A stretch of DNA of 64,000 nucleotides, from positions 190,712,001 through 190,776,000 of the forward strand of contig NC_042997.1 of assembly GCF_006345805.1 (NCBI RefSeq). The letters are read 5' to 3'. Under the pieces are notes generated by a model. It was not told the origin of the DNA, searched no databases, and worked only from the letters and a program-made list of their open reading frames with translations. The position numbers and the translations under genes were made by a program. Shown here in pieces: positions 8,380-63,810 of the stretch (positions within the stretch are counted from its first letter, which is position 1; each line of letters begins with the position of its first letter). This stretch comes from Octopus sinensis. Taxonomy: Eukaryota.

Positions 8380-8590
8380 TTGTGTGCATTCGGGGCTTTC
8401 TTCCAAGGAATCTGGTGCGCTTGGCTTGGATTTTCCTTTGGGGCTGGCTGGGTCGGAGCAATCTCAAGATTAATCAGCCGAAATTGCGAGGATGATCCGG
8501 TTCTTGACTGAAAATTGAAGACTTCGAATGTCCCGTCCGTGTTTTTTGTGTCGTCTTCTAGGTGTTTTGCGTTCTTGTCCCAGTTTGTAT
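8380..8590. repeat. Dispersed repeat of unknown class; related copy at ~43510-43615
   Basis: Shared block ctttcttccaaggaatct..ttttcctt..gagcaatctcaag..taatcagccga in both places. Confidence 0.6.
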
Positions 8591-8618
8591 TTTTTTACAT
8601 ATACATGTATATATATAT

Positions 8619-8664
<46 letters not shown>

Positions 8665-11665: not shown

Positions 11666-12083
11666 GAAGTCGGTGAGCTGGCAGAAACGTTAGCACGCCG
11701 GGCGAAATTCGTAGCCGTATTTCGTCTGCCACTACGTTCTGAGTTCAAATTCCGCCGAGGTCGACTTTACCTTTCATCCTTTCGGGGTCGATAAATTAAG
11801 TGCCAGTTACGCACTGGGGTCGATGTAATCGACTTAATCCGTTTGTCTGTCCTTGTTTGTCATCTCTGTGTTTAGCCCCTTGTGGGTAGTAAACAAATAG
11901 GTATTTCGTCTGCCGCTACGTTCTGAGTTCAAATTCCGCCGAGGTCGACTTTGCCTTTCGTCCTTTCGGGGTCGATAAATTAAGTACCAGTTACGCACTG
12001 GGGACGATGTAATCGACTTAATCCGTTTTTCTATCCTTGTTTGTCCCTTCTGTGTTTAGCCCCTTGTGGGTAGTAAAGAAATA
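11666..12083 (+). mobile_element. SINE B2, head + two bodies, 15-bp TSD
   Basis: TSD ggtattaaactcatg at 11651-11665 and 12084-12098. Second body restarts at gtatttcgtctgccgctacg. Confidence 0.9.
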
Positions 12084-13357: not shown

Positions 13358-13570
13358 GGCGGCAAGCTGGCAGAATCGTTAGCACGCCTACCAAAATGCT
13401 TAGCGGCATTTCATCCATCTTTACGTTCTGAGTTCAAATTCCACTATGATCGACTTTGCCTTTCATCCTTTCGCAGTCTGTAAAATAAGTACCAGTTGAA
13501 TACTGGGGTCGATGTGATCGGCTTACTTCCTTCACCGAACTTACTGGCTTTTTGCCAAAATGTGAAACCA
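13358..13570 (+). mobile_element. SINE B1
   Basis: ggcggcaagctggcagaatcgttagcacg..gagttcaaattcc..gccaaaatgtgaaacc. Confidence 0.85.
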
Positions 13571-14582
13571 AAGTTTATTACAGTAAAACAAAATTCGTTT
13601 CACGAATCTATCCGATGTTTTTAGCCTCTAAGTACAAATTCTATCGGATCCTCTGCGCCTTCTCTCCAAGGTAGATTGAGGATAAATAAAATATGTAAGC
13701 AGCAGGAGCACTATGAATATGACAAGTGTATTATATTTTTTTTTTACTTACTATTTCTAAACATTAAGTCCTACAATCAATGAATGCAGCCTGAAGGCGT
13801 ACGTTTTTGCAGTAAGAAGTTGATAATCCACCGTTTTTCTTTAAATCGGTTTACCAAAAAGAATCAAGCAATTGACTCTCTCACATCCATGAAATAAATA
13901 TTGATTGACGCCAAATTATAAGGAAATCATCCATTTTTTAAAATCTAAAGTTTGTTTGGAGTGGAGCTTCATCTGGTGAACGTCATATAGGTAAATGCAA
14001 TCATTTAACAAAACAGTACAACATATTTTGATTTGTTTGTTTGCTTTTTTCAACAAGATTTTATTGGAAATGTCAATCATTGAGTTCTTTTGGCTTTCCA
14101 GCTGAAATTTTTTTCTGAAGGTATATATCCTCAAAACACTAAACTGACAAGTATTTTATATTTTATTTTTACAATCAAAATTCATTTTTAACATGATTTG
14201 ATTAATACTTGCTTTGATAAAATTTAGTATAAATGTTGACTTTTAACATGATTTTTTTTTTATATAAATAGCTTTAATAAATGAAGTTTTAAAACATGTG
14301 TGTGTATATAGGACGTGTTCAAATTTAATAAGAATTTCATTTTTACAAGAATTTATGTAAATGGAAGTTATTATTTGTCACGGCATAAATCCGTTTAGAA
14401 TTTGTGGGATGCCAATTAAGTAACAATTATTTCATGATGTTTTAAATGTCTACAAGGGAAAATCAGAAGTTGTGATGTGCCTGCATTTCCCCACAGATTA
14501 ACGGTCCAGTAACTCCAAATATTAACCTCTTGTAATCTCTTTGATGATGTTATTTCAGCTGTTGTTTTAGAATTTACAGCAT

Positions 14583-16800: not shown

Positions 16801-17267
16801 ATCATTTTTCTTTTTTGATATTTTTAGATAATTAATGATGTCTCTATTTCTTCATATGCGTAAGTTTTCCCCCAAACAATATCTTCATATTTTGTGCCTA
16901 GATAACTTATTATGCCTACCTAACACTTTAGTCTAAATGGCATTCTTCTCCCTCCTCCTTCCATAAAGTTATAACCTTACATTTAAATTTTAATTTGACT
17001 TAGAATACCTTTTTTCTATAAAATTTGTCTCACTTCTTCCGTTCAGATGAAGAGTGATGTACAAATATATGTCTACATTTTAAAATTTCCTTCTTTTTTT
17101 TTCCCCTTATATATTTCCATCTAATTTACACACAGTGTTATATTTTGAAAATGAATGTACCTCAATTATTTCTCCGTTTTTTAAAATAAAACTTTAGTTT
17201 TAAGTTAATTTTATTTCTATTTCTATTATGTTAACAATTCAGATACTGAAGGCCGAATCGTTACCGC

Positions 17268-17455
17268 ACCGGTAAAAATGTTTAGCGTCATTTCTTCCGA
17301 CTTTATGTTCTGAATTCAACTGCCGTTGCGGTCGACTTTGCCTATCATCCTTTCAGGATCGATAATACACGTATCAGTTGAGCAATGGTGTCGCTGTAAT
17401 TGATTTAACCCCTTTCCTGAAATTGCTGGACTTGAACCAAATTTTAACATCAATA
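17268..17455 (+). mobile_element. SINE B1, diverged
   Basis: gaatcgttaccgcaccgg..gtcgactttgcctatcatcctttcaggatcgata..aaattgctggacttgaaccaaa. Confidence 0.75.
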
Positions 17456-19655
17456 ATTTAAATACATCTGCTTATTGACTCACTCTAAGATCTAACTTGG
17501 TTCTCATTTTTACTCTACAGTGTATAAATGTATCGTCCACTTCTATCCACAACCTACACTTTTACAACAATTTTTTAAAAGAATTACACTCGTTAACGTA
17601 CTTATATACTTTAATACTACCAGATTTCAAAACATATTTTCAATGTTGCTAACATTATTTTTATCAATTTTAATCTTTTTCAGTAGTAATATATTTTAAT
17701 ATATTTGTCAAATATTTCTTCCTCGTGTATTCCAAACTATTTCCTTCAAATACTTACACAACGTCATACATTGAGTTTGTCTTTCTGAAACTTTTCTTTT
17801 TTTCTTTTCATTTTTCTCTCTATCTACTTCAACATTTCTTTCGTCTCTTATCGTCTTCCTGCCATATAATTCTTTTCTTCTCTCTCCCTCCCTCCTTCTA
17901 CGTTTCCATATCTCTCTATACATCTTTCAAATAAAGTCCGTTTGGACTGAAAATCTTTACTGATGGGCAGACAATTCCTTATCAACAGAAATTCTTCCTT
18001 CCTTCATCATTGCCTTCTCTCTTCTTAGTCTCTCTTTCTTTGAAATACATTTAGTCAGCGGTATATCGTTGCTAAAATAACTCTCCAAAATGCATTTCAC
18101 CTTCATTTATTCAATTAGCATATTCTGAACACGTGATATAGCCATGTGCTAAAACATAATATTTTCATGTCCGTATCGACTGTGTAAAACGCATTAAAGT
18201 AAGAGGCACTATTATTTTAGTGCTGATGAATATCTTAAACTGCAATTTTGGTGTAGATAAATATCTTAAACTTTAGCGTTAGGTGAACGATATGTTTTAT
18301 AGTTCATACGATAACTTTTTTTTATGCAAACCCCCTACTGCAGATAAAAATCCGTGTTAATTTCTCAGATATTGGAAAGTAATATATTTCTGTTTTTAAA
18401 GTGGGTTACAATAAATATATAATATAGAATTTAAGGGGGCGGATACATGAACAAAGGAAGTATATTACAGCGGTGTGTGAAGACGAAGGTTGGTATTGAA
18501 AAATAGTTGAAAAATGAGAGAATGACAAAAGATGGAAGAGAAAAGAGAGGATTGATAAAAGATGAAAAACAAATTAATGTAAAGCAAGTTAAATTTCTGT
18601 TCGTTTTCATGACTTTAACCTAGTACAGCTGGTGTTTACTGCTTCTGTGAAAAGTGCTTCGTGTGTCCCAGTTCTGTAACAAGTGAGTCAGAAGTGTCGG
18701 CAGTACCTGATCTGTTCTCATCTGTTGTTTGGATAGAGGCATTGATTGCGGAGGCCTTTGAAGATTTTTCCTTGTCCTTGCTATGTTCAAACCATGCTCT
18801 TTGCTTCTGTTTTACTTGGGTTTAGATGTAACAACGATTTTCCATTTAAGCACTAGACTGAAGCGTTTCCCTTTACTTGTCACACGTAGTTGGCTAATTT
18901 AACTGTTTTGTGTGATTGTGTGTCTGTCTGTCTGTATGTGTGTGTTTCTAAAAGAAAATGTAGCATTATAATTTTTTTACATTTCGCCATGTCTATGTTA
19001 ATATTCACGTACCAGTTGTCTGTTAAACGTTTTAGATGTTATACTGCGTATGTTATCGCTTCTGCGTTATAGCATTCATTTATTACTGCCGCTGCATCAG
19101 CATGTAACTTTATTTTCAATGGATGTGTTAACGTATGCGTATGACATGCGTTTCCATATTGTTCATTCAACTATATTATATTTTCAATTTTTATCTGTTA
19201 AAAAGGTATTTTATGTCTACGATTGGCGGGTTAGTTCTTGACAATTTACTTTAGAAAAAGTCTAGCTGTTTTATATCTGAAATTGGCAAAAATGTGGTTA
19301 GAGAATGTAGAATACTACTACGTGTCTTCTTAATTCGCGGGTAGATAGCAATGTCAGTTGGTAATTTCATTTCTTAATCCAGAAACCTGTAAAGCGTTAT
19401 TGTATAGGCAGCTGCATTATCGAATGTTTGAACACACCTTGCCTGAAAATATCAATTGTAATGTTGTTGATGAAGGCCTAAAAGACTAAGGGTGCGTAGT
19501 ATAAAGCTACGTTGATATAAGGGAATTTCTCCACGGGTTTTGAATGTTTTTTGTGAGTTATTTAATCTTGTGCAACACCATGCAACTCAGCTCTAATTAA
19601 TGTAATAACCGTAGATACATCAAAACTTTTAAATACTAATATTAAAGCTTTTAAA

Positions 19656-22974: not shown

Positions 22975-23590
22975 TATTTCGTTACTACCCACAAGGGGCT
23001 AAACTTAGAGGGGTCAAAGAAGGACAGACAAACGGATTAAGTCGATTATATCGGCCCCGGTGTGTAATAGGTACTTATTTAATCGACCCCGAAAGGATGA
23101 AAGGTAAAGTCGACCCCGGCGGAATTTGAACTCAGAACGTAGCGGCAGACGAAAGACGAAGTACATATTTTCTTTACAAACCACAAGGGGCTAAACACAG
23201 AAGGGACAAACAAAGACAGATAAACGGATTAAGTCGATTATATCAACCCCAGTTCGTAACTGGTACTTATTTAATCGACTTCGAAAGGATGAAAGGCAAA
23301 GTCGACCCCGGCGGAATTTGAACTCAGAACGTAGCAGCAGACGAAATACGAAGTACATATTTTCTTTACAAACCACAAGGGGCTAAACACAGAAGGGACA
23401 AACAAAGACAGATAAACGGATTAAGTCGATTATATCAACCCCAGTTCGTAACTGGTACTTATTTAATCGACTTCGAAAGGATGAAAGGCAAAGTCGACCC
23501 CGGCGGAATTTGAACTCAGAACGTAGCAGCAGACGAAATACTGCTGAGCATTTCGCCCGGCGTACTAACGTTTCTGCCATCTCGCCACCT
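22975..23590 (-). mobile_element. SINE B2, one head + three bodies (~192-bp period)
   Basis: Two of the bodies share private variants (cgacttcgaaagg, tcaacccc, agcagcagacg). The third differs. Confidence 0.9.
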
Positions 23591-23802
23591 TTCCAGCTTT
23601 TCATCTATGTTCCTGATAGAAGCAACCACAGACCAGTTTAAAACACGAAAATGTCCACCACAAACAAAAGGCCTTGATTCTTTGGAATTCCAGTTTTAGA
23701 TATGATAACTAACACACGCTTCTGTATTTGCGTTAACAACTCTGAAAACAGTATGGTTGACATTAATTATTTTCTTACTATGATAGGCACATGGCTATCT
23801 GT

Positions 23803-24127: not shown

Positions 24128-24332
24128 GATAGGCACAAGACCTGAAATTCTAGAGGAGTGGGATAATCGATTACATAGACTCCAGTGCTCGACTGGTAAA
24201 TATTTTATCTACTCCGAAAGATTGACAGGCAAAGTCGACATCAAGGAAAATTTGAGCTTCGAACTTAATGAGTCGGAAGGATGCCGCTAAGCATTTTTTC
24301 CAAAGTGCTTACAATCCTACCAGTTCATTGCC
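24128..24332 (-). mobile_element. SINE B1, diverged
   Basis: aggcacaagacctgaaattc..atcgattacat..ggcaaagtcgac..gccgctaagcatttt. Confidence 0.7.
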
Positions 24333-24939: not shown

Positions 24940-25368
24940 TCATATTGGTTTCAAATTTTGGCTGAGGGTCAGCAAGTTCAGGGGGAGGTGGGTAAGTCGA
25001 TTACATTGACCCAAGTACTCAGCTGGTAGTTATTTTATAGACCTCCGAAATGATGAAACACAAAGTCGGACTCGGCGGAATTCGAACACAGAACGTAAAG
25101 ACGGACGAAATGCCTACTTCTCTACTACCCACAAGGGGCTAGACACAGAGGGGACAAACAAGGACAGACAAACGGATTAAGTCGATTATATCGACCCCAG
25201 TGCGTAACTGGTACTTATTTAATCGAATCCGAAAGGATGAAAAGCAAAGTCGACCTCGGCGGAATTTGAACTCAGAACGTAGCGGCAGACGAAATACCGC
25301 TAAGCATTTCGCCAGCTCGCCGCCTTCAGACGGACGAAATATCGCTATGCATCTTTCTCTCGGGCGTA
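24940..25368 (-). mobile_element. Old SINE B1 interrupted by a younger B2 copy (25112-25327)
   Basis: 13-bp direct repeat agacggacgaaat at 25099-25111 and 25328-25340 brackets the B2 copy. Old head remnant lies beyond 25340 and the old B1 body below 25099. Confidence 0.85.
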
Positions 25369-27699: not shown

Positions 27700-27734
27700 A
27701 GACAAACAAACGGATAGACAGATAGATAGGTAGG

Positions 27735-27791
<57 letters not shown>
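27700..27791. repeat. (GACA)/(GGTA)/(GATA)n compound tetranucleotide repeat, 3' flank of the Tx1-like LINE
   Basis: Seen directly. Confidence 0.95.
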
Positions 27792-27792
<1 letters not shown>

Positions 27793-28189
27793 TGTTTCTT
27801 TATTAGCCACACAGGGCTGCACACAGATAGAACAAATTACAAGGTAGAGCTTTTCTTTTGAAGGTTTAAAAAAAAAAAAAAAAAAAAAAAGAAGGGGGAG
27901 TTTCGATCAAAAGGGATCGTAAAAGGAGAGAAAGAGGACAAAAGAAAGGGGGGGTTAAAAAAAAAAAAAAGGGGGAGAGGAAAAAAAAATTGATCAATAG
28001 GGATCGTTATCACAGAAATGTCAATATGAAGTGTAAAGGGGAGGACAGGTGAGGTTTACCCGTGGAAAGAAAAGCCTACGGAAAAGACCACGGTAACCTC
28101 GGTCAATGAAGTCACATTTTATATTTCTTTTTTTTTTTTTTTTTTTTTTTTTTTGCAAATAAGCAACTCTCTGTTTTCGATTTCTGAGT

Positions 28190-31100
28190 TCATAGGACTA
28201 TGCTCAAGGTGGCTTCGTCATTCATACGTGCCATTCTTGCTACATTCACCCATCTTTTTTTAAAACATTCGCTAGACAAAACTTGCCTCTCTACTCTCAC
28301 TTTCCTTTTCAAGTGGTACTTGAAGAAGTTGATGAGAGATTGACCAGAGAGGAAAGTGTTTGTCTCCAATCCTTTCAGACGCGTCCACCAGATACATTCT
28401 TTCGCCATAGCCACAAGGATGTATCTGGTGGACGCGTCTTCCTTCCCGTTTGAAGGAAGGAGGCGTGACAATATTGACGATAGACTCAGCTGATAAACCG
28501 ACTCGTCCCACACGTGACAGCAGTTGTTCGACATAAGCCCACAGGTCGAAATTGTTGGACACTAAACGAGTGCGTGCAGAACGGTTTCGTCGCTCTGACC
28601 GCATCTCGGGCAGGTCGGCCCCGTGTTTCTCGAGCCGTGTCTGTAGAGCTTATCCCGAACGGGTAGCGCTTCTCGGTAGCACTGCCAGGCCAGGGATCTC
28701 TGGAAGTTGTCCATGGGCCCTGGCCCGAAAGTCGTCCCGAACAGGCGGTCAGGTACTCCTCGTCGACGTCCAGGTTCGCCCCGAGCTCGTCGTCGTACCC
28801 CCCCTCCACTAAACCCCTATAGAATGCTTTGGTTGTGTTGAAGTCACTTAAGGTCGACCCAGGACGGCAGAGTTGCTTGAGAGCAACGCGACACTCGCGG
28901 TGCATTCGCCCTTCCTCGGCCTCTTTTTGATCCACGACTGCAGTTCGGTCATGGAGACGAGCTGCGGGAAAGCGTGCCTCACAAACGGCGACCACACCTG
29001 TTCACCGTCGTCTACATAGAGCCAGAGATGTCGCAGTCTCAGCGCGTGTCTGTGCATCATCAACCACGGCATGCCCAGCCCTCCTTTTAACGGGTGTTGA
29101 CAGCAAATGGATCGCCTGACCATCGGGACGCATCCTTTCCACAAGAAGCGAAAGAGGATGCGTTGTAGTTTGGTGATGGTAGGGTCGGGACAAGGTACGA
29201 CGGTCAGGCGGTAGTAGATGACGGACGCGATGTACGTGTTCGCCACCTCCGCTCGACCTTTTAGGGACAGTTTCCTCTCGGCCCATTGCCGGGCGAGAGT
29301 GACCACCCTACTCGTTATCTCGTTCCAGTTCTTCTCCACTTGGAGGTCCGGACCAAACCAGACCCCGAGCAACTCAACCGGGCCGTCGGTCCAGCGTCCC
29401 ACGACGGAGGCGCTGGTGGACGGCATGGGCTTGCTTCTCCAGGTGCCTAGTCGCAAGCCCACTGACTTTTCCCGGTTGATTTTCGCTCCTGTCACCGCTT
29501 CGTAGTTTTTCAGTGTCTCGCCGACCAGCTCGATGTGCTCGTGGCTAGACACTATGACGGTGACGTCGTCCGCGTATGCAGACACGCTCGTCCCGCATCC
29601 CAATTCTCGCGGGATGCCCCTTAGAGTCGCCAGCTTCCGCAGTAGTGGCTCAAGAGTCAATACGTATAGAAGCGCCGAGAGGGGGCATCCCTGACGGACC
29701 GAACGTGCAATGTCGAAAGGTCTCGATAGATGTCCATTTACGCGAATTACCGAACGGATGCCTCTGTACAAGGCAGCTATCCAGCCGCGGAAGACGGGAC
29801 CGAAACCAGCCGCTCTCAGGACTGCCTCCAAGTATCGATGGTCTACCCTATCAAAGGCTTTCGATTGATCCAAGTTGATCAGGGCCCCACCCATGCCAGG
29901 TTCGTTAACTACCCTGTCTATGATGTAGCGCATCAGATGGAGGTTGTCATGGATGGTCCGGCCTGGCACGGCGCATGTTTGCGCCTTGTCGACCAGTTTC
30001 TCGATGACAAGCGCCAACTTCTTGGCTAGCACCTTGGCCAAAATTTTCAAGTCTGCATTAATCAGAGTGATGGGCCTAAAGTTATCTATTACATTTCCCT
30101 TGTTTAGATCTTTCTTCAGCAGTGTTACGGCTCCTCGGCTCACAAAACCAGGAATGCTCCCGTTTTGCTGCCAGTTTCAGTACACCGCCGCCAAGAGATC
30201 TCCAAACAAGTCTGGCATACAATTGTAAAGCTCGTAGGGTAGACCATCCAAACCCGGTGATTTGTCCCTCGAGCATTCTGCCATCGCTTCCCGCACTTCC
30301 GCCGCCGTGATGGCACCTTCGCAGCACCCTGCCCTTCTTGTCGAGAGTCGTGTAGGCTATGTAGGTAGGCACTGAAGTCCACCCTACGTTCTTGCCCTCC
30401 ACTCGTTCCGAACAGTCGGGCAAAATGCTGCTGAAAGGCCTCACACATTTTACTTGGCTCGAGCAATTCGCGCCCCTGTTCATCTACCAGTGACCGAATG
30501 GTGGCTTTGTTGCCCTGTTGCGCCTCTGCCACCCGGGCCTCTCTCGCGGCTCCAACACCTTCGTTCCTTAGAGCACGCATCCTAGCTCTGACAGCACATC
30601 CTTCGTGTTTGGCGTTGAAGTGCTGGTCGAGGGCCAACCTCGCCGCCAAAACGTCGGATGCGATGCCGCTTCTAATTGCCTCTTCTAGCTTCTTAACTAG
30701 CTCACCCTCTACTCTATTTCTATCTATGGCTAGTGCTTTGCTGTACCTAATCGCTTCTGCTTTTACTGCTCTCTTGAGGGCAAACCACCATTTGTTGTTG
30801 ATGATGGCTCCCGTCAAAGCCCTCTTTACTAGTGTGCTAATCCGGTCTCTGAAAACTTGTCTCGATGGAAAGACGCGTTTAGTTTCCAGTATCCGGGACC
30901 CTGCCTAAGTGTCTTACCTAAGTCTAGCGTACATGTCACAAGTTTGTGATCCGTGTAGCTGACTATGTGGAATTGTGGACATCCTATGCTATCTCTATCT
31001 ACTGTCCTACACAGTATCCTATCTAGATACGATCTCGACGACCCGATGCGGTTGCTCCATGTCCACGTTGGCGCATTCGGGTGGTCTAGTCGGAACCTGT

Positions 31101-31625
31101 CAGACAGTTGAAAGCGTCTGAGCAGGTCTCTGAGGCATTTGCATCCCCGTCTATTCCTATCTCTACCCACGTAGTCTACATGCGTGTCCAAGGTAGCATT
31201 CCAATCCCCCACTAAGAGTAAAGGACGAGACGTTCCAAGAAAACTTCTAGACGTTGAAAGAAATCCGCCCGACCTGTTAAGGGCGGTGCGTAAACTGATA
31301 CGAGTCGAAAAGCGCACCCATTGCTGCCGTCGACATCCAGGACGACCAGTCTACCCTCCGGGTCTACGAATATTGTCCTTACATTGAGATCCAGACTCTT
31401 GTGAAAAAGTACCGCGGTGCCACTACCGCCCATTCTCGGCAGACAGGGGGAAAAAAAAATGTTGAACTGTCCGCCAAACATGGTCTTTAGGGCCCGCGGA
31501 TTGTGGAGTCTGGTCTCGCTTATGGCTATGATTTCTAACTTATGTGACTTTATGTCATTTAAGAGGTACCCTTGTTTCCAAGGGGACCCCAAGCCACGCG
31601 CATTTACACAACCAATCTTGATCAT
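28190..31625 (-). pseudogene. Tx1-like LINE ORF2 (AP endonuclease, reverse transcriptase, C-terminal CCHC), disrupted
   Basis: IGCVNARGL, ISETRL, VGDWNA, SYLDRI, TDHK, WKLNAS; KSPGLDGLPYELY; FRPITLIN, LDQSKAFDRVDH, SVRQGCPLS, AYADDV; CPRCGQSDETVLHALV*C. Several frameshifts and at least two in-frame stops. Confidence 0.92.
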
Positions 31626-31639: not shown

Positions 31640-33653
31640 AGAATACAGAGGGTTACTTACTGCTCGAAAGTTTTTGCTTTCTCCTCCGTTGGTTTGTCCT
31701 CGAGAAGGTCCCAGTACAGTTTCTTTGTGAGATATTTTTGGCATTTACCAACCGCACTGGGGAAAATGCCTTTGAGTGTGTGGTGCAGACTTTTGGAGAT
31801 GTGTAATATTTTGATGTGGTCTGGTGGTGTTGTGTATGGGTGATTGTTTGTTTTATGTCATCTTCTGTTATGTTTGTTTTTGATTGGATTATTCCATCAA
31901 TTTGTGTTTTTGGTGTCTATGGCTGTGAGCATGTTTGCTGTATATGTTTTTGTGGTGTTGGTGTGGCTGTTGTTTGCGTTGGGTTTTGAAATGTCTTCGG
32001 GAGATGTATTTCCCCCTGCTTTGTTCGTGTTTGCATTTGGTTTGGTTGTGTTTCTGCTCTTTATTTTCCTTCTTTTTGTAGCTATTTGCCATTCCTCACT
32101 GGTTTCGTCTCTCCGACGAAATTCTGAGGAATCAGAAGGGGGTAGGGGTATGTTGTGGGCTTCTATGTATGTCTGTGTAAGTGGTTGTGTTGTTGTTTTC
32201 GTTGTTGTTGGTTGTTGAGTGTTTGTGTGTTGAGTGCGGTATAAGGGATGGGGGATCAGTTTGTGTGTGTTTTCTTTGTTTTTCTGTTCCTTTGGGTTTT
32301 GCTGTTGATGGTGGTGTTGGTATTTTTTCAGGTGTCGAGTGGTTTTTGGTTGATGACGGATTAGCTTGGTGTGCTTCTCTTGTCGTCTTCTGTGTTGATG
32401 GTGGTGTGGGTAGTAGAGCTTTTTTTCCGGAGTGCTTTGGTTGTGGTAGTGGTTGTTGTTGTTGCTCTTGGTGTGCAGTGGTTGGGCACGTCTTTTTCAA
32501 GTGTGTTTCGCTTCCACACAAATAGCAGCGTGGTCGCCTGCCCTCTACCACTATATAGAGTTTGTAGCCTCCTGGCAGTTCTATAGCGGTGGGTATCTTC
32601 TCTCTTGCTGCTTCATCCAATTGAAGCAGGAATTCGATTGATTTGCCCACATAGTCTTTCTCTCCTAGAACCGCGATTTCCAGGATGTTTGTCTCTGACA
32701 TTGTCTCTGACATTTCAAAGCAGATGGCAGAGACCAACCATTGTGTTTCGACATCAAATGGTATGTTTTTTATTTGGACTTTCGTGACCCTTTTGTTTAA
32801 ATAGACTGGTATCATTACCAAGTCGTCCGAATGCAGCTCCAATGTGGAAAAACGTTTTGCTAAACTTTCGTTGAGGAAACGTACTTGGACTGTACCAAAT
32901 TTGTTTCCCCAACTGATATATTCCTTGGAGTCCCATGCAGGACGAAGGCATTTATCGATTTTTTCCTGCGGTGCATTTTCTGTTCTTCTTGTTTTTTTGT
33001 TTATTACTTTATAAATTATTGTTTTTTTTGTGTGTTTTCCACGATGTGTTGTGGAATATGAAGGTGCAATTTGTCTCCTTCTTTGGAGAAGAGTGCCTTT
33101 GTGCGGTTTATCTCTTGTGTGGTGAATGTTACAATTGTTCTTTTTTGTTTTGTTACGTCCGCAAAATTCGTTTTGAATTTGGCAGTAGAAGTGTTATTGT
33201 GGCAGTGTTAATTGAAGTCATGGTAGTGGTGTTGGTGTTGGCGGTATTAGCAGCAGAAGGCTTGGATGTAGCATTTGACGTCGTAGTAGTGGTGTTGGTG
33301 TTGGCGGTGTTGTCTTTGGTAGGCGGCTTTGTGCCAATTTCGTTGTTGTTGTTGTTGTTGGTGGTGATGGTGGTGGTGCTGGCATTCATGTTTTCGTTTG
33401 TATTCATTTTTGAAATCCCTTTCTCTCTGTCCCTTTATTATCAACAAGTGGTGGGGAGTGAGGGGAAATCTAAGTTAATGTCTTTGGTCGCGGCGATGGT
33501 GAATGCGACGTTAGATTTGTTGTTGTTGTTGTGGTAGTGGTGATGGTGGTGACAGCGGTGTTCACGCTGCGATGTTTAGCACTAGTGGTAGCAATAGTGT
33601 TTTGCTACCGTCTGCATGACTGGCGGGCTAGCCACGTGGTTTCTAGTTGCCAT
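31640..33653 (-). pseudogene. Tx1-like LINE ORF1 (gag-like), frameshifted
   Basis: ATG at 33653. T/N-rich low-complexity N-terminus, RRM-like FGTVQVRFLNESLAKRFSTLELHSDDLVMIPVYLNKRVTKVQIKNIPFDV, zinc knuckle CYLCGSETHLKKTC (ORF 32132..32842), P/T/Q-rich C-terminus. Confidence 0.8.
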
Positions 33654-33873: not shown

Positions 33874-34215
<342 letters not shown>

Positions 34216-36486: not shown

Positions 36487-36700
36487 AGACGGCGAGCCGG
36501 CAGAATCGTTAGCACGCTGGACGAAATGCGTAGCGGTATTTCGTCCGTCGCTACGTTCTGAGTTCAAATTCCATCGAGTTCGACTTTGCCTTTCATCCTT
36601 TCGGGTTCCATGAACTAAATACCAGTTAAGCACCGGGGTCGATGTAGTCGACTGAATCCCTTCTCCCAAATTTGAGACCTTGTGCTTCCAGCAGAAAGAT
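36487..36700 (+). mobile_element. SINE B1
   Basis: gacggcgagccggcagaatcgttagcacg..gagttcaaattcc..gtcgatgtagtcgac. Confidence 0.85.
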
Positions 36701-36864
36701 TGTTATTATTATTATCATTATTATTATTATTATTATCATTATTATTATTATTATCATTATCATTATTATTATTATCATCATTATTATTATTATTATCATC
36801 ATTATTATTATTATTATCATCATTATTATTATTATTATTTATTATCATCATCATTATTATTATA

Positions 36865-37024: not shown

Positions 37025-37110
<86 letters not shown>

Positions 37111-37322
37111 AGCGGCGAGTTGGCTTAATCAATAGCTCGCTGCACGAAATGCTTACCGGTATTTCGTCTGCCGTTACGTTCTGACTTCAAATTCTGTCAA
37201 GGTCGACGTTGCCTTTCATCTTTTTGGGATTGATAAATTAAGTACCAGTCAAGTACTGGGGTCTATGTAATCGACTTACCCCTCCCCGAAAATTTCAGGC
37301 ATTGTGCCCATATTAGAATGGA
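37111..37322 (+). mobile_element. SINE B1
   Basis: gcggcgagttggc..gtatttcgtctgccgttacg..cccctccccgaaaatttcaggcattgtgcc. Confidence 0.85.
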
Positions 37323-37372
37323 TTATTATTATTGTTGTTGTTGTTATTATAATAATTATTATTATTATTGAT

Positions 37373-37903: not shown

Positions 37904-38100
37904 GCAGCTGGCTAGCAGAAACTTTAGCACGCCAGGCAAAATTCTTAGCAGCAATTTGTCCGAGTTCAAATTCTGTCGAGGTCCACTTTGTCTTTCATCC
38001 TTTCGAAGTCGATAAAATAAGTTCCTGTTGAGTGCCGGGATCAATGTAATCGATTAATCCCTCCAACGAAATTGATGGCCTTGTACCAACATTTCAAACC
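37904..38100 (+). mobile_element. SINE B1, diverged
   Basis: ttagcacgccaggcaaaat..gagttcaaattc..ggccttgtaccaacatttcaaacc. Confidence 0.8.
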
Positions 38101-38400
38101 AACACTTGTTACAGTAAGGGCCAATAAAGAAACGGGAAAAATATGACTACCTTTTAAAAAAGACTTTCCAAAAACTAACAGCCAAGTAAGTAGGGGATTT
38201 TAGCCAGAGAAAGAAATGAATTAAAATAAGCCGCTGCAGCCATTAAAAACAGTTGTAAATCTAGAGAAATGTATTGAAGGAAGTCAACAAATATAAAATA
38301 GAGACGGATGTATCATATAATTGTGAGGTGGAGTGAGAAACAAATCGCTGAAACGAGTAGTAACTTGGGTGAAAATGTGACAGTAGAATGTTATGCTTAG

Positions 38401-38935: not shown

Positions 38936-39275
38936 TATTTCTTTACTGCCCACAAGAGGCTAAACATGGAGGGGACAAACAAGGACAGACACAGGGATTA
39001 AGTCGATTACATCGACACCAGTGCGAAAATGGTACTTTATTTATCGACCCCGAAAGGATGAAAGGCAAAGTCGGCCTCGGCGGAATTTGAACTCAGAACG
39101 TAAAGACAGACGAAATACCTATTTCTTTACTACCCACAAGGGGCTAAACACAGGTGACAAACAAGGACAGACAAACGGATTAAGTCGATTACATCGACCC
39201 CAGAACGTAACGGCAGACGAAATACGGCTACGCATTTCGCCCGGCGTGCTAACGTTTCTGCCAGCTCGCCGCCTT
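38936..39275 (-). mobile_element. SINE B2, head + two bodies of different sequence variants
   Basis: Junction aaagaaataggtatttcgtctgtc on the minus strand. Flanked by ggatgtatc(a/g)tat direct repeats. Confidence 0.87.
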
Positions 39276-42070: not shown

Positions 42071-42076
42071 TATCAA

Positions 42077-42308
42077 GGCGGCGAGCTGGCAGAATCGTTA
42101 GCACGCCGGGCGAAATGCGTAGCCGTATTTCGTCTGCCGTTACGTTCTGCGTTCAAATTCCGCCGAGGTCAACTTTGCCTTTCATCCTTTTGGGGTCGAT
42201 AAATAAAGTACCGGTTATGCACTGGGGTCGACGTAATCGACTTAATCCCTTTGTTTATCTTTGTTTGTCCCCTCTATGTTTAGCCCCTTGTGGGCAATAA
42301 AGAAATAT
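42077..42308 (+). mobile_element. SINE B2 monomer
   Basis: Full head. Tail ctttgtttgtcccctctatgtttagccccttgtgggcaataaagaaatat. Confidence 0.92.
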
Positions 42309-45339: not shown

Positions 45340-45725
45340 ATGGTTTCAAATTTTGGCACAAGGCCAGCAATTTTTCACAGGAAGAGGAAGTCGATTGGAA
45401 CGATCCCAACTCTTGACCGGTACTTATTTTATCGATCTAGAAACGATGAAACGCAAAGTTGGCCCCGGCTGAATTTAAACTCAAAACACAAAGCGGTCTG
45501 CCAGCTCGCTGTCTTAGCCTCAGTGATAATGATATTGGTTTCAAATTCTGACACAAGGCCAGTAATTTCGGGGAATGGGGGTAAGTGCTCAACTGGAACT
45601 TATTTTATCAGCCCCGAAAGGAGTGAAAGGAAAAGTCGACTTCGGTGGAATTTGAACTCAGAACGTAAAGACGGACGAAATGCTGCTAGGCATTATGGAC
45701 CGGCATGCTAAAGACTTTGCCTTAG
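45340..45725 (-). mobile_element. Two adjacent diverged SINE B1 copies
   Basis: Each begins (plus strand) ggtttcaaatt..gcacaaggccag. The second has cggtggaatttgaactcagaacgtaaagacggacgaaatgc. Confidence 0.75.
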
Positions 45726-46682
45726 CGTCAGTGATGATAATATCAACTATAATTTATTTTACAAAAAGTTCAAATAGACACTTTGACGGTTTTGTATTTT
45801 GCAAAAAAAAAATTGAAAAAAAAACAGACTTTTAGCAACGTCCATGGCTCTTGACCAGTAATCGAAACCTGATGTTAATATCTTCATTTACGTCATCACG
45901 ACATAGCCGTGGCTACTGTTATCTTTAAAGATGCCATATTCATTGTCTTTCTCATCATTATCAATTCAGCGTCACCACCTTCACCAACGTCATTGTCTCG
46001 TGCACTTTTCAAAGAAAATGCAAGGAAGTTTATATGGCATCGTAATTTAGACGGAGTTTGCAGGCAATGATGGTTGTGATAAACCGTCTTGAGTTTGGTG
46101 GCGAGGAGAGGAACTATAAAAATATAGTCTGAATGAATTAAAATCGTTTCAACTCACGCACATATACTCATACACATGCAAACACACACATATACACACA
46201 AACACGTACACACACGCACAAACACAAGCACACGCACACACAGACATAAGCATACATACTTGCATGCATCATCGTTTCATGAATATCATTTTAAAATTAT
46301 TTGTATATAATATTTATTTATACAGTTTCTCAATACTATTTCGATACACAGTTCTCGGGAGTCCTTATTTATACTATTTTATTCATTCATTCATTCATTT
46401 ATTCATTAACGAAGTGGTTGTTTGTTGGTTTTTGTGTTCTTTTTTTTTTACTGTTTGTTTTTCTTTTTTCTTTTTCTTACTTTGTTGTTTTGATTATTCT
46501 TTTTTAAACACCGTCTGTTTATATAGCTTCATACAAATACGTGACAACATAATTTAATGACTAAACATTTTATAAACCTATTGAAACGTAAATCACGCAA
46601 ATATATTACTGGCTTTCTTCAATTAAACTGTGCTTTACTGCTTGCACTACTCAAAGTGCAATATATATGCGTGTATATATAT

Positions 46683-46902
46683 ATTTCTTTACTACCCACA
46701 AGGGGCTAAACACAGAGGGGACAAACAAGGACAGACAAAGGGATTAAGTCGATTACATCGACCCCAGTGCGTAACTGGGGTTATCGACCCCGAAAGGATG
46801 AAAGGCAAAGTCGACCTCGGCGGAATTTGAACTCGGAACGTAACGACAGACGAAATACGGCTACGCAGGTCGCCCGGCGTGCTAACGTTTCTGCCAGCTC
46901 GC
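46683..46902 (-). mobile_element. SINE B2 monomer in (TA)n context
   Basis: atttctttactacccacaaggggctaaacacagaggggacaaacaaggacagacaaag...ctgccagctcgc. Confidence 0.9.
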
Positions 46903-62133: not shown

Positions 62134-62809
62134 CAAATGCGTGAGTGCTGTTGTTTTAGCTTCTTTTCTTATCACCCGTGATGCATATTGGACCGTATCT
62201 TTTGGTTGAAATTTTAAATTTTATCCATTTTCTGCAATGATCTTTATTACTGTTTTGTTCTTTCTGTTTGGAAACTGTTCGTCTCTGAAGTAATTTTTTC
62301 TAGGCGTTGTTTCCATATAACAAGAAACTACTGTTGACTTGATGCGTCGAGAAAAAATTAAATATTTTATAACTTTGTACTTCTGAGTATGGAAGATTTC
62401 AAAATGCTCGATAATACCTGTTGCTCTTTCGAATGACAGTGAAGTTGAAGAAGATAGTTGTATGGCTTTGATGTAGTTGTTCTATTCGATATTGTTTTTG
62501 TTCTTTCTTTCGTAGCTACGGTTGTAGTTGTGATTTTGCTGCTATTGTTTCTGTGAAGGCGGTATAGATGGTGATGATGATGGCGAACGTGTGGTAGGCA
62601 GTCTTCGATACTCTTTCCAACATCCTATCAAACCATCTCGATTTCAACTTTCTTTGCCGTTTTTGGTGGTTCTGATGAGCAAAATGAATGTGATAGTGAC
62701 AGATATGGTGGTGATAATGGTAAAAGACGTGCAGACTATCGATTTTGATGATGCAGGAGGTCTTTCTGGTCGATAGGATGATGAGAAGGAAACGATTTGC
62801 CCATTCAAT

Positions 62810-63400
62810 TTCTTTATTAACCATGAGGTTGAGAAAAAGTGGGGACGATACGAGGACAGACAAAACAAACATTGGGGTCAGGGTTGGAATGAGATGAAAC
62901 GTATGAATAGACAAACAATTAAAATATATACAATTAAATGGGAATTAGGGATTTACGAAAAAGGAAGCGGAGGACGCGGTCGACCCCACAAACCACATAC
63001 TGACACAGAAGACTTTGCTTTCTCCTTTTTATATTCTCGTTTAAACAGGTTCTTTCACTCGCAACATACTTGCTATAGACTTCCATCTTTTACGAAACAC
63101 CCTTTGCGACAGGCATTTCTTCTCCTGCCTTATTTTCCGTTTCATGTAGAAAACGAAAAAGTCGATTAGCTCGAGACTGGAGATGAACATTCCTGTTGCA
63201 ATTCCTTTTACTCTCGTCTGCTACACTACCTCTTTCGCCATAGCAACTACCGAGAGAAAACAGGCTCGCTCCTTCCTATTCAGGGAGGTCGGCGGAACAA
63301 TCTTAATTAGATATTCGCTCGACAGTTGTACTCTTCTCGAATGCGAAAGCAGGTGTTCGACATAAGCCCAGAGCTGAGTCACCTTGGGGGCATTGCACAA
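62810..63400 (-). mobile_element. 3' fragment of a second, diverged Tx1-like LINE family
   Basis: IVQCPKVTQLWAYVEHLLS..VAMAKEVV*..RKIRQERR..FRKRW aligns with LWAYVEQLLS..VAMAKECIW..RKVRVERQ..FKKRW of the 28-kb element. The 3' UTR ends AATAAAGAAA. Confidence 0.82.
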
Positions 63401-63810
63401 TCGACGTCACAGTGGTGGAAACATTGGTGATGATGGTGGTGTTGTTCTCTTTATTGGCGCTAGTTATTGTCCCCTAGCCACAATCACCGTCATTGCCACA
63501 GTGTTTACAGGGCCTGAAACTCTTTTTCACTAAAAATAACGAAATACGACTTGTTGTTCGTCTTATTTTTGTTTTTTGGTACTACTAATACTGTAACAAT
63601 TTGATATGTTGCTGTTATTTCTACCTGTGGTGGTGGTGGTGGTGGTGGTATTGGCGGGTGGTAGTAGTTATTTGTGATGTCATTACTGCAAAATTTCTTC
63701 TGAAAATATTTAGACATAATCGTATTTTTCCCTTGACTAGTAAAATTTTCGAAACAAATGACAAGCGACTGTTACCGCGTATCACTGCTACCTCCTTTCT
63801 TTTTCTTTCT

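What the first reader, a model, noticed from the sequence alone, without database searches (positions are those of the whole stretch)
27792..27844. SINE B2 carries the 3' tail of the Tx1-like LINE: candidate Tx1-driven SINE/LINE pair
Seen: the LINE ends (sense) ccttgtaatttgttctatctgtgtgcagccctgtgtggctaataaagaaacat. The B2 copy at 46683 ends ccttgt---ttgtcccctctgtgtttagccccttgtgggtagtaaagaaatat. By eye this is 40/50 identical columns plus one 3-nt gap. The second Tx1-like 3' end (62810-62870) shares tttgtctgtcct..gtcccc..taaagaaat with B2. B1 copies have the same head and core but an unrelated tail. Known: many SINEs borrow the 3' end of the LINE that mobilises them, mostly CR1, L2 and RTE types. 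To my knowledge, L1/Tx1-clade partners with a homologous tail are reported far less often. Inference: B2 arose by tail-swapping onto a Tx1 3' UTR and is mobilised by a stringent Tx1 machinery.
Basis: partly seen in the sequence, partly recalled or inferred. Interest (0 to 1): 0.8.

Follow-up and report, generated by a model that had tools for sequence, protein, structure and literature searches.

The report
Octopus SINE borrows Tx1-like LINE tail
A short, very abundant repeat (SINE) in this cephalopod DNA ends with the same roughly 40-60 base hairpin-containing tail as a Tx1-like LINE next to it, which is the usual sign that the LINE's enzyme copies the SINE; this is an ordinary kind of partnership, but with a LINE group for which it has rarely been reported.

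Summary
Its last ~42-58 nt match the exact 3' ends of two LINE copies in the window: LINE A, 27792-27844 on the minus strand, and LINE B, 62808-62864 on the minus strand. With SINEs masked, these two LINE ends are the best two matches to the B2 tail in all 64 kb. No dinucleotide shuffle out of 5000 reaches the observed score.

The tail belongs to the LINE lineage. It closes homologous 3' UTRs in LINE A, in LINE B, in a related contig (L002) and in Argonauta hians LINE copies. In Argonauta, local SINEs carry an almost identical tail (57/72 identical, z=17.8).

The tail folds into a bulged hairpin with a GGCC/GGCC-type apical stem and a CUUGU loop, followed by AAUAAAGAAAU. Two apical stem pairs show compensatory changes.

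B2 copies end precisely at ...GTAAAGAAATA, have no poly(A) and carry 12-18 bp target-site duplications.

The LINE has an APE endonuclease, an RT and a zf-RVT domain, plus an ORF1 with a CCHC knuckle. Its RT is closer to vertebrate proteins named 'transposon TX1' (35-40% identity) than to human L1 ORF2p (26%).

Neither LINE copy in the window is the exact partner of B2 (~79% tail identity). Mobilisation is inferred, not shown. The B1 tail is not unrelated, because it carries the same hairpin.

Verdict: a new member of a known kind, of moderate interest.

The parts
27792..27844 (-). It holds hairpin AGCC-CUGUGU-GGCU followed by AAUAAAGAAACAU. It is homologous to the SINE B2 tail.
   Evidence: Covariance model R1 hits 27793-27831 with E=0.008, and this sequence was not in the model's seed.
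27792..28192 (-). 3' UTR of LINE A, about 400 nt, with expanded T runs. It is homologous to the 3' UTRs of relatives (shared CCCC..GATTTCT block and terminal tail).
28193..31625 (-). LINE A ORF2, now dead. The APE endonuclease lies at 30829-31625, the RT at 28848-30143 and the C-terminal zinc-binding region at 28193-28744. It has at least 4 frameshifts and 1 in-frame stop.
   Evidence: Pfam finds Exo_endo_phos and RVT_1. tblastn to P0001/P0002 maps the regions. Intact relatives carry zf-RVT PF13966. RT similarity is higher to TX1-named proteins than to human L1.
32132..32842 (-). LINE A ORF1, 236 aa, with one CX2CX4HX4C zinc knuckle (CYLCGSETHLKKTC). No L1-type ORF1 domain is present.
   Evidence: Translation. 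No Pfam family at E<0.01.
27700..27791 (-). (ATCT)n array that degenerates into GTCT/GTTT units, directly after the LINE A end. It is either the element's own 3' repeat tail or its target microsatellite.
33874..34215 (-). Same-strand (ATCT)n/(GTCT)n/(ACCT)n array upstream of LINE A. This sets an upper bound of about 33873 for the LINE A 5' end. The true 5' end was not determined.
62808..63460 (-). LINE B, a 5'-truncated copy of a related family. The ORF2 C-terminus lies at 63038-63460 and the 3' UTR at 62808-63037. The tail at 62808-62864 matches the B2 tail over 58 nt, with hairpin AACC-UCAU-GGUU.
   Evidence: R1 hits 62807-62844 with E=0.078.
46682..46902 (-). The LINE-derived tail is 46682-46740.
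   Evidence: R1 scores 64.6 bits. The TSD is ATATATACACGC-like.
42075..42307 (+). SINE B2, full-length monomer (consensus 1-233, K2P 0.073).
11667..12083 (+). SINE B2 dimer. A full unit at 11667-11899 is followed by a partial unit (consensus 51-233) at 11901-12083. One TSD, GGTATTAAACTCATG, flanks the whole.
22975..23591 (-). SINE B2 trimer. A full unit at 23361-23591 is followed by two partial units at 23169-23350 and 22975-23158. One TSD, AGA[T/A]GAAAAGCTGGAAA, flanks the whole.
24993..25313 (-). SINE B2 unit (25115-25313, consensus 35-233) joined to a partial unit with a B1-type tail (24993-25111).
38936..39275 (-). SINE B2 array. An internally deleted first unit (39201-39275 and 39120-39211) is followed by a partial unit at 38936-39118. 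The TSD is TATA[C/T]GATACATCC[A/G]CTT.
37911..38140 (+). Example of a SINE B1 copy. It has the same head and core but a different tail, GATGGCCTTGTACCAACATTTCAAACC...TTACAGTAAGGGCCAATAAAGAAAC. That tail carries the same CUUGU hairpin and a LINE-like terminal motif. Other B1/B3 copies begin near 3720, 13362, 17251, 24167, 36492, 37115, 45388 and 45584.

Best explanation
B2 is a 233-bp non-autonomous retroposon (SINE). It has a head with a Pol III B-box-like motif and a body shared with subfamilies B1 and B3. Its last ~58 nt were copied from the 3' UTR end of a Tx1-like (L1-superfamily) LINE lineage that lives in octopod genomes.

The tail forms a bulged hairpin. The outer arms are UCU.../...AGA. 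The apical stem is 4 bp of the GGCC/GGCC type. The loop is CUUGU. The hairpin ends in AAUAAAGAAAU.

The proposed mechanism is as follows. The LINE's ORF2 protein recognises this structure on its own RNA and, in trans, on SINE RNA. It nicks the target DNA with its APE endonuclease. It then starts target-primed reverse transcription exactly at the end of the tail. That would explain why copies end at ...AAAGAAATA, carry no poly(A) and are flanked by 12-18 bp duplications.

Shown here:
- the tail homology
- that the tail belongs to the LINE lineage
- the precise 3' ends and the TSDs
- a hairpin consistent with compensatory changes
- similarity of the LINE to the Tx1 group

Inferred:
- that the hairpin is the recognition element
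- that a Tx1-like ORF2p mobilises B2
- that the actual partner is a family outside this window
- the direction of transfer, LINE to SINE
For: Tail similarity:
- B2 against LINE A gives 33/42 identical, z=12.4. B2 against LINE B gives 43/58, z=8.8-9.0. No shuffle out of 5000 reaches either score.
- These two LINE ends are the top two non-SINE matches in the whole window.

The tail is a LINE feature:
- It is present at the end of homologous 3' UTRs in LINE A, LINE B, L002 (73% aa identity) and two Argonauta hians copies (65% aa identity).
- The last 40 nt are 65% identical on average, against 49% for the rest of the UTR.

Independent replicate: Argonauta SINEs share 57/72 and 51/62 positions with the Argonauta LINE tail, z=15.6-17.8, including the same terminal ATCTAT.

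Structure:
- A 12-bp bulged hairpin is paired in 87% of cells, against 32-62% when the partners are slid.
- Apical pair 20-43 occurs as GC:10, CG:8, AU:1. Apical pair 19-44 occurs as GU:11, GC:5, AU:3.
- Covariance model R1, searched over 100 kb on both strands, finds only SINE and LINE tails. Hits outside the seed are L002 (3.8e-4), LINE A (0.008) and LINE B (0.078).

Retroposition hallmarks:
- B2 copies end at GTAAAGAAATA with no poly(A).
- TSDs are 15, 17, 18 and at least 12 bp.
- K2P distance from the local consensus is 0.03-0.09.

LINE identity:
- APE endonuclease and RT domains are present, and relatives carry zf-RVT.
- ORF1 has a CCHC knuckle and no L1-type ORF1 domain.
- The RT is 35-40% identical (208-250 bits) to TX1-named vertebrate proteins and to Q76IM4, against 26% (135 bits) to human L1 ORF2p.

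Literature:
- L1-Tx1 is the only L1-group LINE listed among recently active octopus LINEs.
- SINE and LINE expansions coincide at JC distance ~0.065 (PMC13282606).
Against: - Neither LINE copy in the window has a tail close enough (~79%) to be the actual driver of B2 copies, which are 91-97% identical to their consensus. The true partner was not seen.
- The compensatory changes come from few independent lineages. Many rows are related B2 copies, and alignment A5 is fitted to the model.
- LINE A is dead, so nothing here shows a Tx1-like family active at the time B2 was active in this genome.
- The tRNA origin of the head was not detected by ARAGORN or Rfam.
- Placement in Tx1 rests on pairwise similarity and on NCBI-given names, not on a phylogeny with a full reference set.
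- No functional data exist.
Confidence: 0.75

Rival explanations
1. The resemblance is chance similarity between T/G-rich, A-rich 3' ends that both contain a poly(A)-signal-like AATAAA.
For: The tails are compositionally biased (TGT-rich, then A-rich). The next-best window hits lie in TG-rich simple sequence.
Against: No dinucleotide shuffle out of 5000 reaches the score. The two best hits in 128 kb of searched strand are exactly the two LINE termini. Both alignments are anchored at the ends of the elements. The relationship recurs more strongly in Argonauta.
Confidence: 0.01
2. The direction is the reverse, or the match is an artefact of adjacency. Either the LINE copies picked up a SINE tail, or a 5'-truncated SINE fragment landed at the LINE's end, so the tail is not a native LINE feature.
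For: LINE A's 3' UTR is interrupted by long T runs. Argonauta L001 shows nested or tandem tails. Recombination between SINE and LINE RNAs is known in general.
Against: The tail closes the 3' UTR in LINE families only 41-65% identical in protein, in three different sources. Tail divergence among LINEs tracks LINE divergence. The B2 body sequence upstream of the tail is absent from all LINE copies. B1, B2 and B3 share head and body but differ in tail, which is the pattern expected for tail exchange in the SINE.
Confidence: 0.05
3. The tail is a historical relic. B2 is, or was, amplified by another LINE clade abundant in octopus (RTE, CR1, Dong-R4), or by a relaxed mechanism that does not read the tail.
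For: No LINE with a near-identical tail is in the window. Other LINE clades are more abundant and active in octopus genomes (PMC13282606, PMC9115989). A degraded, unrelated RT fragment is present at 4942-5532.
Against: Young B2 copies (K2P 0.03-0.09) keep the tail and its hairpin intact and end at one precise nucleotide without poly(A). No other sequence in the window resembles the tail. Argonauta SINEs track the local LINE tail, which argues for ongoing selection for a match.
Confidence: 0.12
4. The pairing is real, but the LINE is not Tx1. It could belong to another branch of the L1 superfamily, such as an L1 'F'-type lineage or a mollusc-specific clade.
For: No phylogeny with curated clade references was possible. 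The 'transposon TX1' names are automatic best-hit names. Target specificity, a hallmark of many Tx1 elements, is not established here.
Against: The RT is clearly closer to the TX1-named set and to Q76IM4 (Takifugu pol-like protein) than to human L1. Octopus repeat annotations report L1-Tx1 and no plain L1 (PMC13282606, PMC8967140). ORF1 has a CCHC knuckle and lacks the L1 ORF1 domain. LINE A sits inside an (ATCT)n array, as microsatellite-specific Tx1 elements do.
Confidence: 0.1

Closest known systems
ZmSINE2/ZmSINE3 with LINE1-1_ZM (maize) and SINEX-3_CR with L1-1_CR (Chlamydomonas): the L1-clade 'stringent' SINE/LINE pairs (Ohshima 2012, PMC3472496)
   Same: The SINE's last ~45-80 nt are homologous to the 3' end of an L1-clade LINE. 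The tail forms a conserved stem-loop with compensatory changes. Such pairs are rare for this clade: 3 of the 58 pairs then known.
   Different: Those pairs are in plants and an alga, and they end in poly(A). Here the host is an animal (cephalopod), the LINE is on the Tx1-like branch, there is no poly(A), and the ends are short or microsatellite-type 3' repeats: (ATCT)n, (ATT)n, ATCTAT.
SINEU with Tx1-Mar in crocodilians (Kojima 2015, PMC4494074)
   Same: A Tx1-group LINE is proposed as the driver of a SINE.
   Different: In that case the link rests on a shared target preference (Mariner-N4_AMi) and shared snRNA-derived heads. SINEU elements have poly(A) tails, and no specific shared 3' tail was reported. 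Here the link is a shared, structured 3' tail. The head has a B-box-like motif rather than an snRNA origin.
UnaSINE1 with UnaL2 (eel) and the ZfL2 elements: the experimentally proven stringent type (Kajikawa & Okada 2002; Hayashi et al. 2014, PMC4176376)
   Same: The proposed mechanism is the same: ORF2p recognises a 3' stem-loop plus a short terminal repeat, a SINE with the same tail is mobilised in trans, and copies have precise 3' ends without poly(A).
   Different: The LINE clade is different (L2, not L1/Tx1). Those cases were tested experimentally, and nothing was tested here.
CORE-SINEs, including octopus OR1/OR2 (Ohshima & Okada 1994; PMC4824008, PMC4758252), and the 'tRNA-Core' SINEs annotated in octopus genomes (PMC8967140)
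   Same: They share the host group and the modular build of head, conserved body and exchangeable LINE-derived tail. B1, B2 and B3 share head and body and differ in tail.
   Different: I could not compare B2 with OR1/OR2 or with a CORE consensus because no reference sequences were available, so membership is untested. Known CORE-SINE partners are L2, CR1 and RTE, not L1/Tx1.
Kibi/Koshi and crocodilian Tx1 families specific for microsatellites (Kojima & Fujiwara 2004; PMC4494074)
   Same: They are Tx1-group LINEs associated with microsatellites. LINE A lies between same-strand (ATCT)n arrays, and L002 ends in (ATT)n.
   Different: With one copy per family I cannot tell target specificity from a self-made 3' repeat tail. 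LINE B and the Argonauta copies are not in microsatellites.

Membership tests
SINE (short non-autonomous retroposon) | Short, non-coding and multi-copy, with each insertion flanked by target-site duplications | tested here: met
   The consensus is 233 bp. There are 10 B2 units in 6 loci and about 10 B1/B3 copies in 64 kb. TSDs of 12-18 bp were found at 4 of 6 B2 loci.
SINE (short non-autonomous retroposon) | Head derived from a Pol III-transcribed small RNA (tRNA), with A and B boxes | tested here: inconclusive
   A B-box-like GAGTTCAAATTCC is present. ARAGORN finds no tRNA, even at relaxed thresholds on the consensus, and Rfam finds none either.
Stringent-type SINE/LINE pair (shared 3' tail) | The SINE 3' end is homologous to the 3' end of a LINE in the same genome | tested here: met
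   The same holds in Argonauta hians.
Stringent-type SINE/LINE pair (shared 3' tail) | A conserved stem-loop in the shared tail, supported by compensatory changes | tested here: met
   87% of cells are paired, against 32-62% when partners are slid. Two apical pairs show changes on both sides (GC/CG/AU and GU/GC/AU). Support is modest because few lineages are independent and the alignment is fitted to the model.
Stringent-type SINE/LINE pair (shared 3' tail) | Precise 3' end without poly(A), ending in short non-A repeats | tested here: met
   B2 ends at ...GTAAAGAAATA directly before the TSD. LINE A ends in (ATCT)n, L002 in (ATT)n, and the Argonauta SINE and LINE both end in ATCTAT.
Stringent-type SINE/LINE pair (shared 3' tail) | The LINE protein mobilises the SINE in trans, dependent on the tail | not testable with these tools
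   This needs a retrotransposition assay.
Stringent-type SINE/LINE pair (shared 3' tail) | A partner LINE family with a near-identical tail and overlapping activity | tested here: not met
   Within the window the best LINE tails are only ~79% identical to B2, and LINE A is dead. The genome-wide test was not possible. In Argonauta the pair is near-identical over the last ~38 nt.
L1 superfamily LINE | APE endonuclease, then RT, then a C-terminal Cys/His zinc-binding region | tested here: met
   Pfam finds Exo_endo_phos and RVT_1 in LINE A. Intact relatives P0001-P0004 carry zf-RVT PF13966. The best solved structure is human L1 ORF2p at 2e-32, against R2 at 1e-14.
Tx1 clade | RT closer to Tx1-group references than to L1 proper | tested here: met
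   LINE A scores 208-250 bits (35-40% identity) against TX1-named proteins and Q76IM4, and 135 bits (26%) against human L1. The TX1-named proteins score 118-135 bits against human L1. This is by similarity only, and no reference phylogeny was made.
Tx1 clade | Sequence-specific target choice (common in Tx1 elements, but not universal) | tested here: inconclusive
   LINE A lies between same-strand (ATCT)n arrays. L002 ends in (ATT)n. LINE B and the Argonauta copies show no such context. No TSD was found for LINE B.
L1 proper (mammalian/vertebrate type) | ORF1 with the L1 RRM/CTD fold (Pfam Transposase_22), and a poly(A) tail | tested here: not met
   ORF1 matches no Pfam family at E<0.01 and has a CCHC knuckle. 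No poly(A) is present at any LINE end.
CORE-SINE superfamily | Central ~65-bp CORE domain | not tested
   No CORE, OR1 or OR2 reference sequence was available. The literature annotates octopus SINEs as tRNA-Core or tRNA-Deu (PMC8967140).

The most novel reading that the evidence does not exclude
B2 may not be the only case. All the main SINE subfamilies of octopods (B1, B2 and B3 here; SINEs make up ~11-12% of the Octopus vulgaris genome) could be driven by different families of one old Tx1-like LINE lineage. Recognition would go through a conserved 3' hairpin with a CUUGU loop that is also kept in cuttlefish LINEs. If so, structure-specific ('stringent') 3'-end recognition is an ancient property of the L1/Tx1 group in animals. 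SINE tails would be repeatedly swapped among LINE families as these turn over.
Probability: 0.4. Interest if true: 0.65.

Novelty: new member of a known kind. Interest (0 to 1): 0.5.

Why it matters
SINEs and LINEs each make up more than 10% of octopus genomes (PMC13282606). SINE expansion is the feature that sets octopus repeat content apart from that of squids and cuttlefish (PMC8967140). None of the papers I could search names the LINE that drives these SINEs.

Tail sharing is the standard signature of a SINE/LINE partnership, but it is rare for the L1 group. Only 3 of 58 known pairs were of this kind in 2012, all in plants or algae (PMC3472496). The one proposed Tx1-driven SINE, SINEU, has poly(A) and no shared tail.

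An animal Tx1-like lineage with a conserved, structured tail shared with abundant SINEs would have three uses:
- It would name the likely engine of octopus SINE expansion.
- It would give an animal test case for the idea that stringent recognition is ancestral in the L1 group.
- It would provide a small, mutable RNA element (stem, CUUGU loop, AAUAAAGAAAU) for direct assays.

It also has a practical use for repeat annotation, through tail-based assignment of SINE subfamilies to LINE partners.

Tried and rejected
- **Metagenome scan with a protein alignment.** I scanned with the ORF2 C-terminus alignment (A1) to collect more LINE tails. 48 pattern matches came back and none was a relative.
- **Metagenome scan with the tail DNA pattern CCNTGTGGNTANTAAAGAAA.** None contains the SINE. 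I did not scan bacterial genome contigs because the same outcome was expected.
- **Look-up of P0091.** This is a LINE fragment filed under a Herbaspirillum MAG. It is not on record.
- **Rfam and ARAGORN.** Rfam with gathering thresholds on the window, Rfam with E-value thresholds on one SINE, and ARAGORN on the window and on the consensus found no tRNA and no known RNA family.
- **Pfam on ORF1 and on the C-terminal ORF fragments of LINE A.** No hits. The zf-RVT evidence comes from intact relatives only.
- **MAFFT alignments of the tails (A2, A3).** These put LINEs with 4- or 6-nt loops out of structural register. RNAalifold therefore gave only a weak 4-bp consensus. I solved this by building a covariance model and re-aligning.
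- **Search for a LINE with a B1- or B3-type tail inside the window.** None was found. The hit at 48100-48300 is another old SINE.
- **TSD search for LINE B.** None of 8 nt or longer.
- **Full-text search of the literature for four SINE or tail sequence strings.** No paper contains them.
- **Papers and supplements not available.** The SINEBase supplements and Albertin et al. 2015 are not held. I therefore could not compare B1/B2 with OR1, OR2 or OK, and I could not check Repbase or Dfam annotation.
- **Pfam on the RT fragment at 4942-5532.** It failed because the frame is full of stops.
Full report
**What is at the coordinates.**

The window is cephalopod DNA, most likely from an octopod. The best protein match of the LINE is a hypothetical protein of Argonauta hians at 65% identity. 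The SINEs have relatives in an Argonauta contig.

On the minus strand, a LINE of about 6 kb ('LINE A') runs from no further than about 33873 down to 27792. Its parts are:
- ORF1 at 32132-32842, with one CX2CX4HX4C zinc knuckle
- an APE endonuclease at 30829-31625 (Pfam Exo_endo_phos)
- a reverse transcriptase at 28848-30143 (Pfam RVT_1, 1.6e-30)
- a C-terminal region at 28193-28744 that aligns with the zinc-binding end of intact relatives
- a 400-nt 3' UTR

ORF2 is broken by at least four frameshifts and one in-frame stop (frames, HSPs).

The flagged interval 27792-27844 is the very end of this element. It reads ...CCTTGTAATTTGTTCTATCTGTGTGCAGCCCTGTGTGGCTAATAAAGAAACAT and is followed by (ATCT)n.

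**The SINE.**

It is a 233-bp element with ten units at six loci in the window. A local consensus ends ...CTTAATCCG-TTTGTCTGTCCTTGTTTGTCCCCTCTGTGTTTAGCCCCTTGTGGGTAGTAAAGAAATA.

About ten further copies share the head and body but have other tails. These are B1 and a third type that I call B3.

B2 units are 91-97% identical to the local consensus (K2P 0.03-0.09). B1 and B3 copies are visibly older.

B2 insertions end exactly at ...GTAAAGAAATA with no poly(A). They are flanked by duplications of 15, 17, 18 and at least 12 bp. One locus showed none.

ARAGORN and Rfam do not recognise a tRNA in the head. Only a B-box-like GAGTTCAAATTCC is evident.

**Is the similarity real?**

Yes.

I scanned the 67-nt B2 tail over the whole window on both strands, with B2 copies masked. 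The two best matches are exactly the 3' ends of LINE A and of a second element at 62808-62864 on the minus strand. Each scores 24. The next best score is 18, in TG-rich simple sequence. The background is 7.8 +/- 1.9.

Dinucleotide shuffles never reach the observed scores (0/5000, z=12.4 and 8.8).

The second element ('LINE B') is a genuine 5'-truncated LINE of the same lineage. tblastn places the ORF2 C-terminus at 63038-63460 (41% identity to P0002/P0003), 230 nt upstream of the tail. Its match to B2 starts right at the point where B2 departs from B1, so the LINE-derived module of B2 is about 58 nt.

**The tail belongs to the LINE lineage.**

I fetched DNA around related proteins.
- L002 is a 2.1-kb contig whose protein is 73% identical. 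It ends ...GTTTCCGGGCCCTTGTGGCCAATAAAAGAAATC(ATT)n.
- The Argonauta locus L001 holds two LINE 3' UTR ends...TCTGTGTCAGCCAGGTGGCTAAGAAAGAAATTT and ...TCTGTGTCGGCCCTTGTGGCTAATAAAGAAATCTAT.

The 3' UTRs are homologous in outline. Their last 40 nt are more conserved than the rest, at 65% versus 49% mean pairwise identity. LINE families that are only 41-65% identical in protein therefore keep this terminus. That argues that the tail is ancestral to the LINEs and was copied into the SINE, not the reverse.

**An independent replicate.**

The same Argonauta contig contains SINEs with a related body. Their tail...TTCTGTGTTCGGCCCTTGTGGCTAATAGAGAAATCTAT, is almost identical to the Argonauta LINE tail, including the terminal ATCTAT. 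The matches are 57/72 and 51/62 identical, with z=15.6-17.8.

In both species the SINE tail resembles LINE tails of the same lineage. In Argonauta the match is close enough to be a working pair.

**Structure.**

All tails fold into a hairpin just before the end. The apical stem is 4 bp:
- LINE A: AGCC/GGCU
- L002: GGCC/GGCC
- LINE B: AACC/GGUU
- B2: GCCC/GGGU

The loop is usually CUUGU. The stem is flanked by a middle stem and an outer stem that pair the conserved UCUGUGU with AAUAAAGA.

On a seed alignment, the 12-bp bulged hairpin is paired in 87% of cells, against 37-50% with slid partners.

I built a covariance model from B2 and Argonauta sequences and searched 100 kb on both strands. It finds only SINE and LINE tails. 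Hits that were not in the seed are L002 (E=3.8e-4), LINE A (0.008) and LINE B (0.078).

On the model-based alignment the apical stem is paired in 96% of cells. Two of its pairs vary on both sides: GC:10/CG:8/AU:1 and GU:11/GC:5/AU:3.

This is consistent with a selected structure. The number of independent lineages is small, and the alignment leans towards the model.

**Which LINE clade?**

Among solved structures the RT is closest to human L1 ORF2p (2e-32) rather than R2 (1e-14). Only those two LINE types have solved structures, so this comparison discriminates little.

Three further observations help:
- Intact relatives carry the zf-RVT domain.
- ORF1 has a CCHC knuckle and no L1-type ORF1 domain.
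- A search started from a 40%-identical hit (P0118) returned vertebrate proteins that NCBI names 'transposon TX1 uncharacterized 149 kDa protein' (alligator, catfish, Betta, hake) and the Takifugu 'pol-like protein' Q76IM4.

LINE A's RT is 35-40% identical (208-250 bits) to these proteins and 26% identical (135 bits) to human L1. The TX1-named proteins are themselves only 25-28% identical to human L1.

Published octopus repeat annotations list L1-Tx1 as the only L1-group LINE (PMC13282606, PMC8967140).

I therefore accept 'Tx1-like', with the caveat that no reference phylogeny was possible.

**How it most likely works.**

This is the classical 'stringent' SINE/LINE relationship. The LINE's ORF2 protein binds the 3' hairpin and terminal motif of its own RNA. 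It starts target-primed reverse transcription at a fixed nucleotide. A Pol III transcript that carries the same tail is accepted in trans.

The supporting observations are:
- the precise ends
- the absence of poly(A)
- the short or microsatellite-like terminal repeats: (ATCT)n in LINE A, (ATT)n in L002 and in B3 SINEs, ATCTAT in Argonauta
- the 12-18 bp TSDs

Binding, trans-mobilisation and the role of the hairpin were not shown.

LINE A and LINE B are only about 79% identical to the B2 tail. They are relatives of the real partner, not the partner itself.

B1's tail is different but not unrelated. B1 (...GAAATTGCTGGCCTTGTGCCAAAATTTGAAACC...) and B3 (...TTTCAGGCCTTGTGCCCATATTAGAAAGGATT(ATT)n) carry the same GGC-CUUGU-GCC hairpin with their own pairing outer arms.

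B1 resembles the tails of related LINEs from the cuttlefish Acanthosepion pharaonis (L006) and from an unidentified assembly (L004), with z of about 5-6. B3 resembles the tail of L005, with z=8.6.

The motif GGCC(C)TTGTG(G)CC occurs 13 times in the window plus six loci. Twelve of those are in SINE or LINE tails.

This suggests, without proving it, that all three subfamilies use LINEs of this lineage and that B2 arose by exchanging one such tail for another.

**Comparison with what is known.**

Tail sharing between SINEs and LINEs is textbook, but it is rare for the L1 group. Ohshima found 3 such SINEs among 58 pairs, in maize and Chlamydomonas, all with poly(A) (PMC3472496, PMC3747384). Neither octopus nor Tx1 appears in that survey.

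Kojima proposed that crocodilian SINEU elements are mobilised by Tx1-Mar. That proposal rests on shared target sites and shared heads. SINEU elements have poly(A) tails.

The papers I could search on octopus repeats do not name a partner LINE for the SINEs. Four diagnostic sequence strings occur in no searchable paper.

I could not consult Repbase, Dfam or SINEBase sequences, so prior annotation there cannot be excluded.

**Verdict.**

The finding is a new member of a known kind: a stringent SINE/LINE pair, here with a Tx1-like partner in an animal. Interest is moderate. It would rise if genome-wide work shows that one hairpin-reading Tx1-like lineage drives the whole octopod SINE expansion.

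Noticed in passing
window 11667-12083 (+); 22975-23591 (-); 24993-25313 (-); 38936-39275 (-): Four of the six B2 loci are head-to-tail arrays. A full or longer unit is followed by one or two partial units. The partial units always begin near consensus position 50 (GTATTTCGTCTG), right after ...AAAGAAATA(G). A single TSD pair flanks the whole array. Units within a locus share private variants. This could reflect template switching back to an RNA 3' end during one insertion, a dimeric master copy, or later tandem duplication. At 25115 a B2 unit is joined to a B1-type unit.
   Followed up: partly
window 27700-27791 and 33874-34215: LINE A lies between two same-strand (ATCT)n/(GTCT)n/(ACCT)n arrays. 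It may have inserted into a microsatellite, which would be target preference like the Kibi/Koshi Tx1 elements. Alternatively the 3' array may be its own slippage-made tail. One copy cannot decide between these.
   Followed up: partly
window 3720-3960, 13362-13620, 17251-17500, 24167-24300, 36492-36750, 37095-37370, 37911-38150, 45388-45735; loci L004 4860-4940, L005 4680-4770, L006 5045-5125: The older SINE subfamilies B1 and B3 have other tails, but these carry the same GGC-CUUGU-GCC hairpin. They resemble the tails of related LINEs from cuttlefish-type assemblies (z 5-6 and 8.6). B3 and the L002 LINE both end in (ATT)n. One B1 copy (about 38077-38140) ends ...TTACAGTAAGGGCCAATAAAGAAAC, which is the LINE-type terminus.
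   Followed up: partly
L001 (Argonauta hians) 8014-8652; also 1124-1162 (-), 9885-9921 (-), 10232-10320 (-): A second copy of the LINE 3' UTR (8400-8652) sits about 115 nt downstream of the first LINE end (8285). A B-box-like GGTTCAATCTGAATC lies in between. This may be a 5'-truncated LINE inserted next to a LINE tail, or a head-plus-3'UTR non-autonomous element. Several more tails of the same type lie within 14 kb. One of them, at 10232-10320, is the closest match to the B2 tail (48/64 identical).
   Followed up: partly
window 4942-5532 (-): A degraded reverse-transcriptase fragment, only 25-28% identical to the Tx1-like RTs and full of stops. It comes from another, unrelated LINE. Its tail region shows no similarity to B2.
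   Followed up: no
window 27850-28150 (-): LINE A's 3' UTR contains three long T runs (A runs on the plus strand) and one A run just after the stop codon. These make it about 130 nt longer than the UTRs of its relatives.
   Followed up: no
window about 63470-63560 (-): Just upstream of the 5' truncation point of LINE B lies ...GTGATTGTGGCTAGGGGACAATAACTAGCGCCAATAAAGAGAAC. It ends in a tail-like CCAATAAAGAGAA and may be the remnant of another LINE or SINE terminus, giving a tandem arrangement as in Argonauta.
   Followed up: no
window 48180-48270 (-): Another old SINE copy (B-box AGAGTTCAAATACCGC) with a B3-like tail ending GAGAAACGATTATTATTAAG. The blast with the B2 copy did not pick it up.
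   Followed up: no
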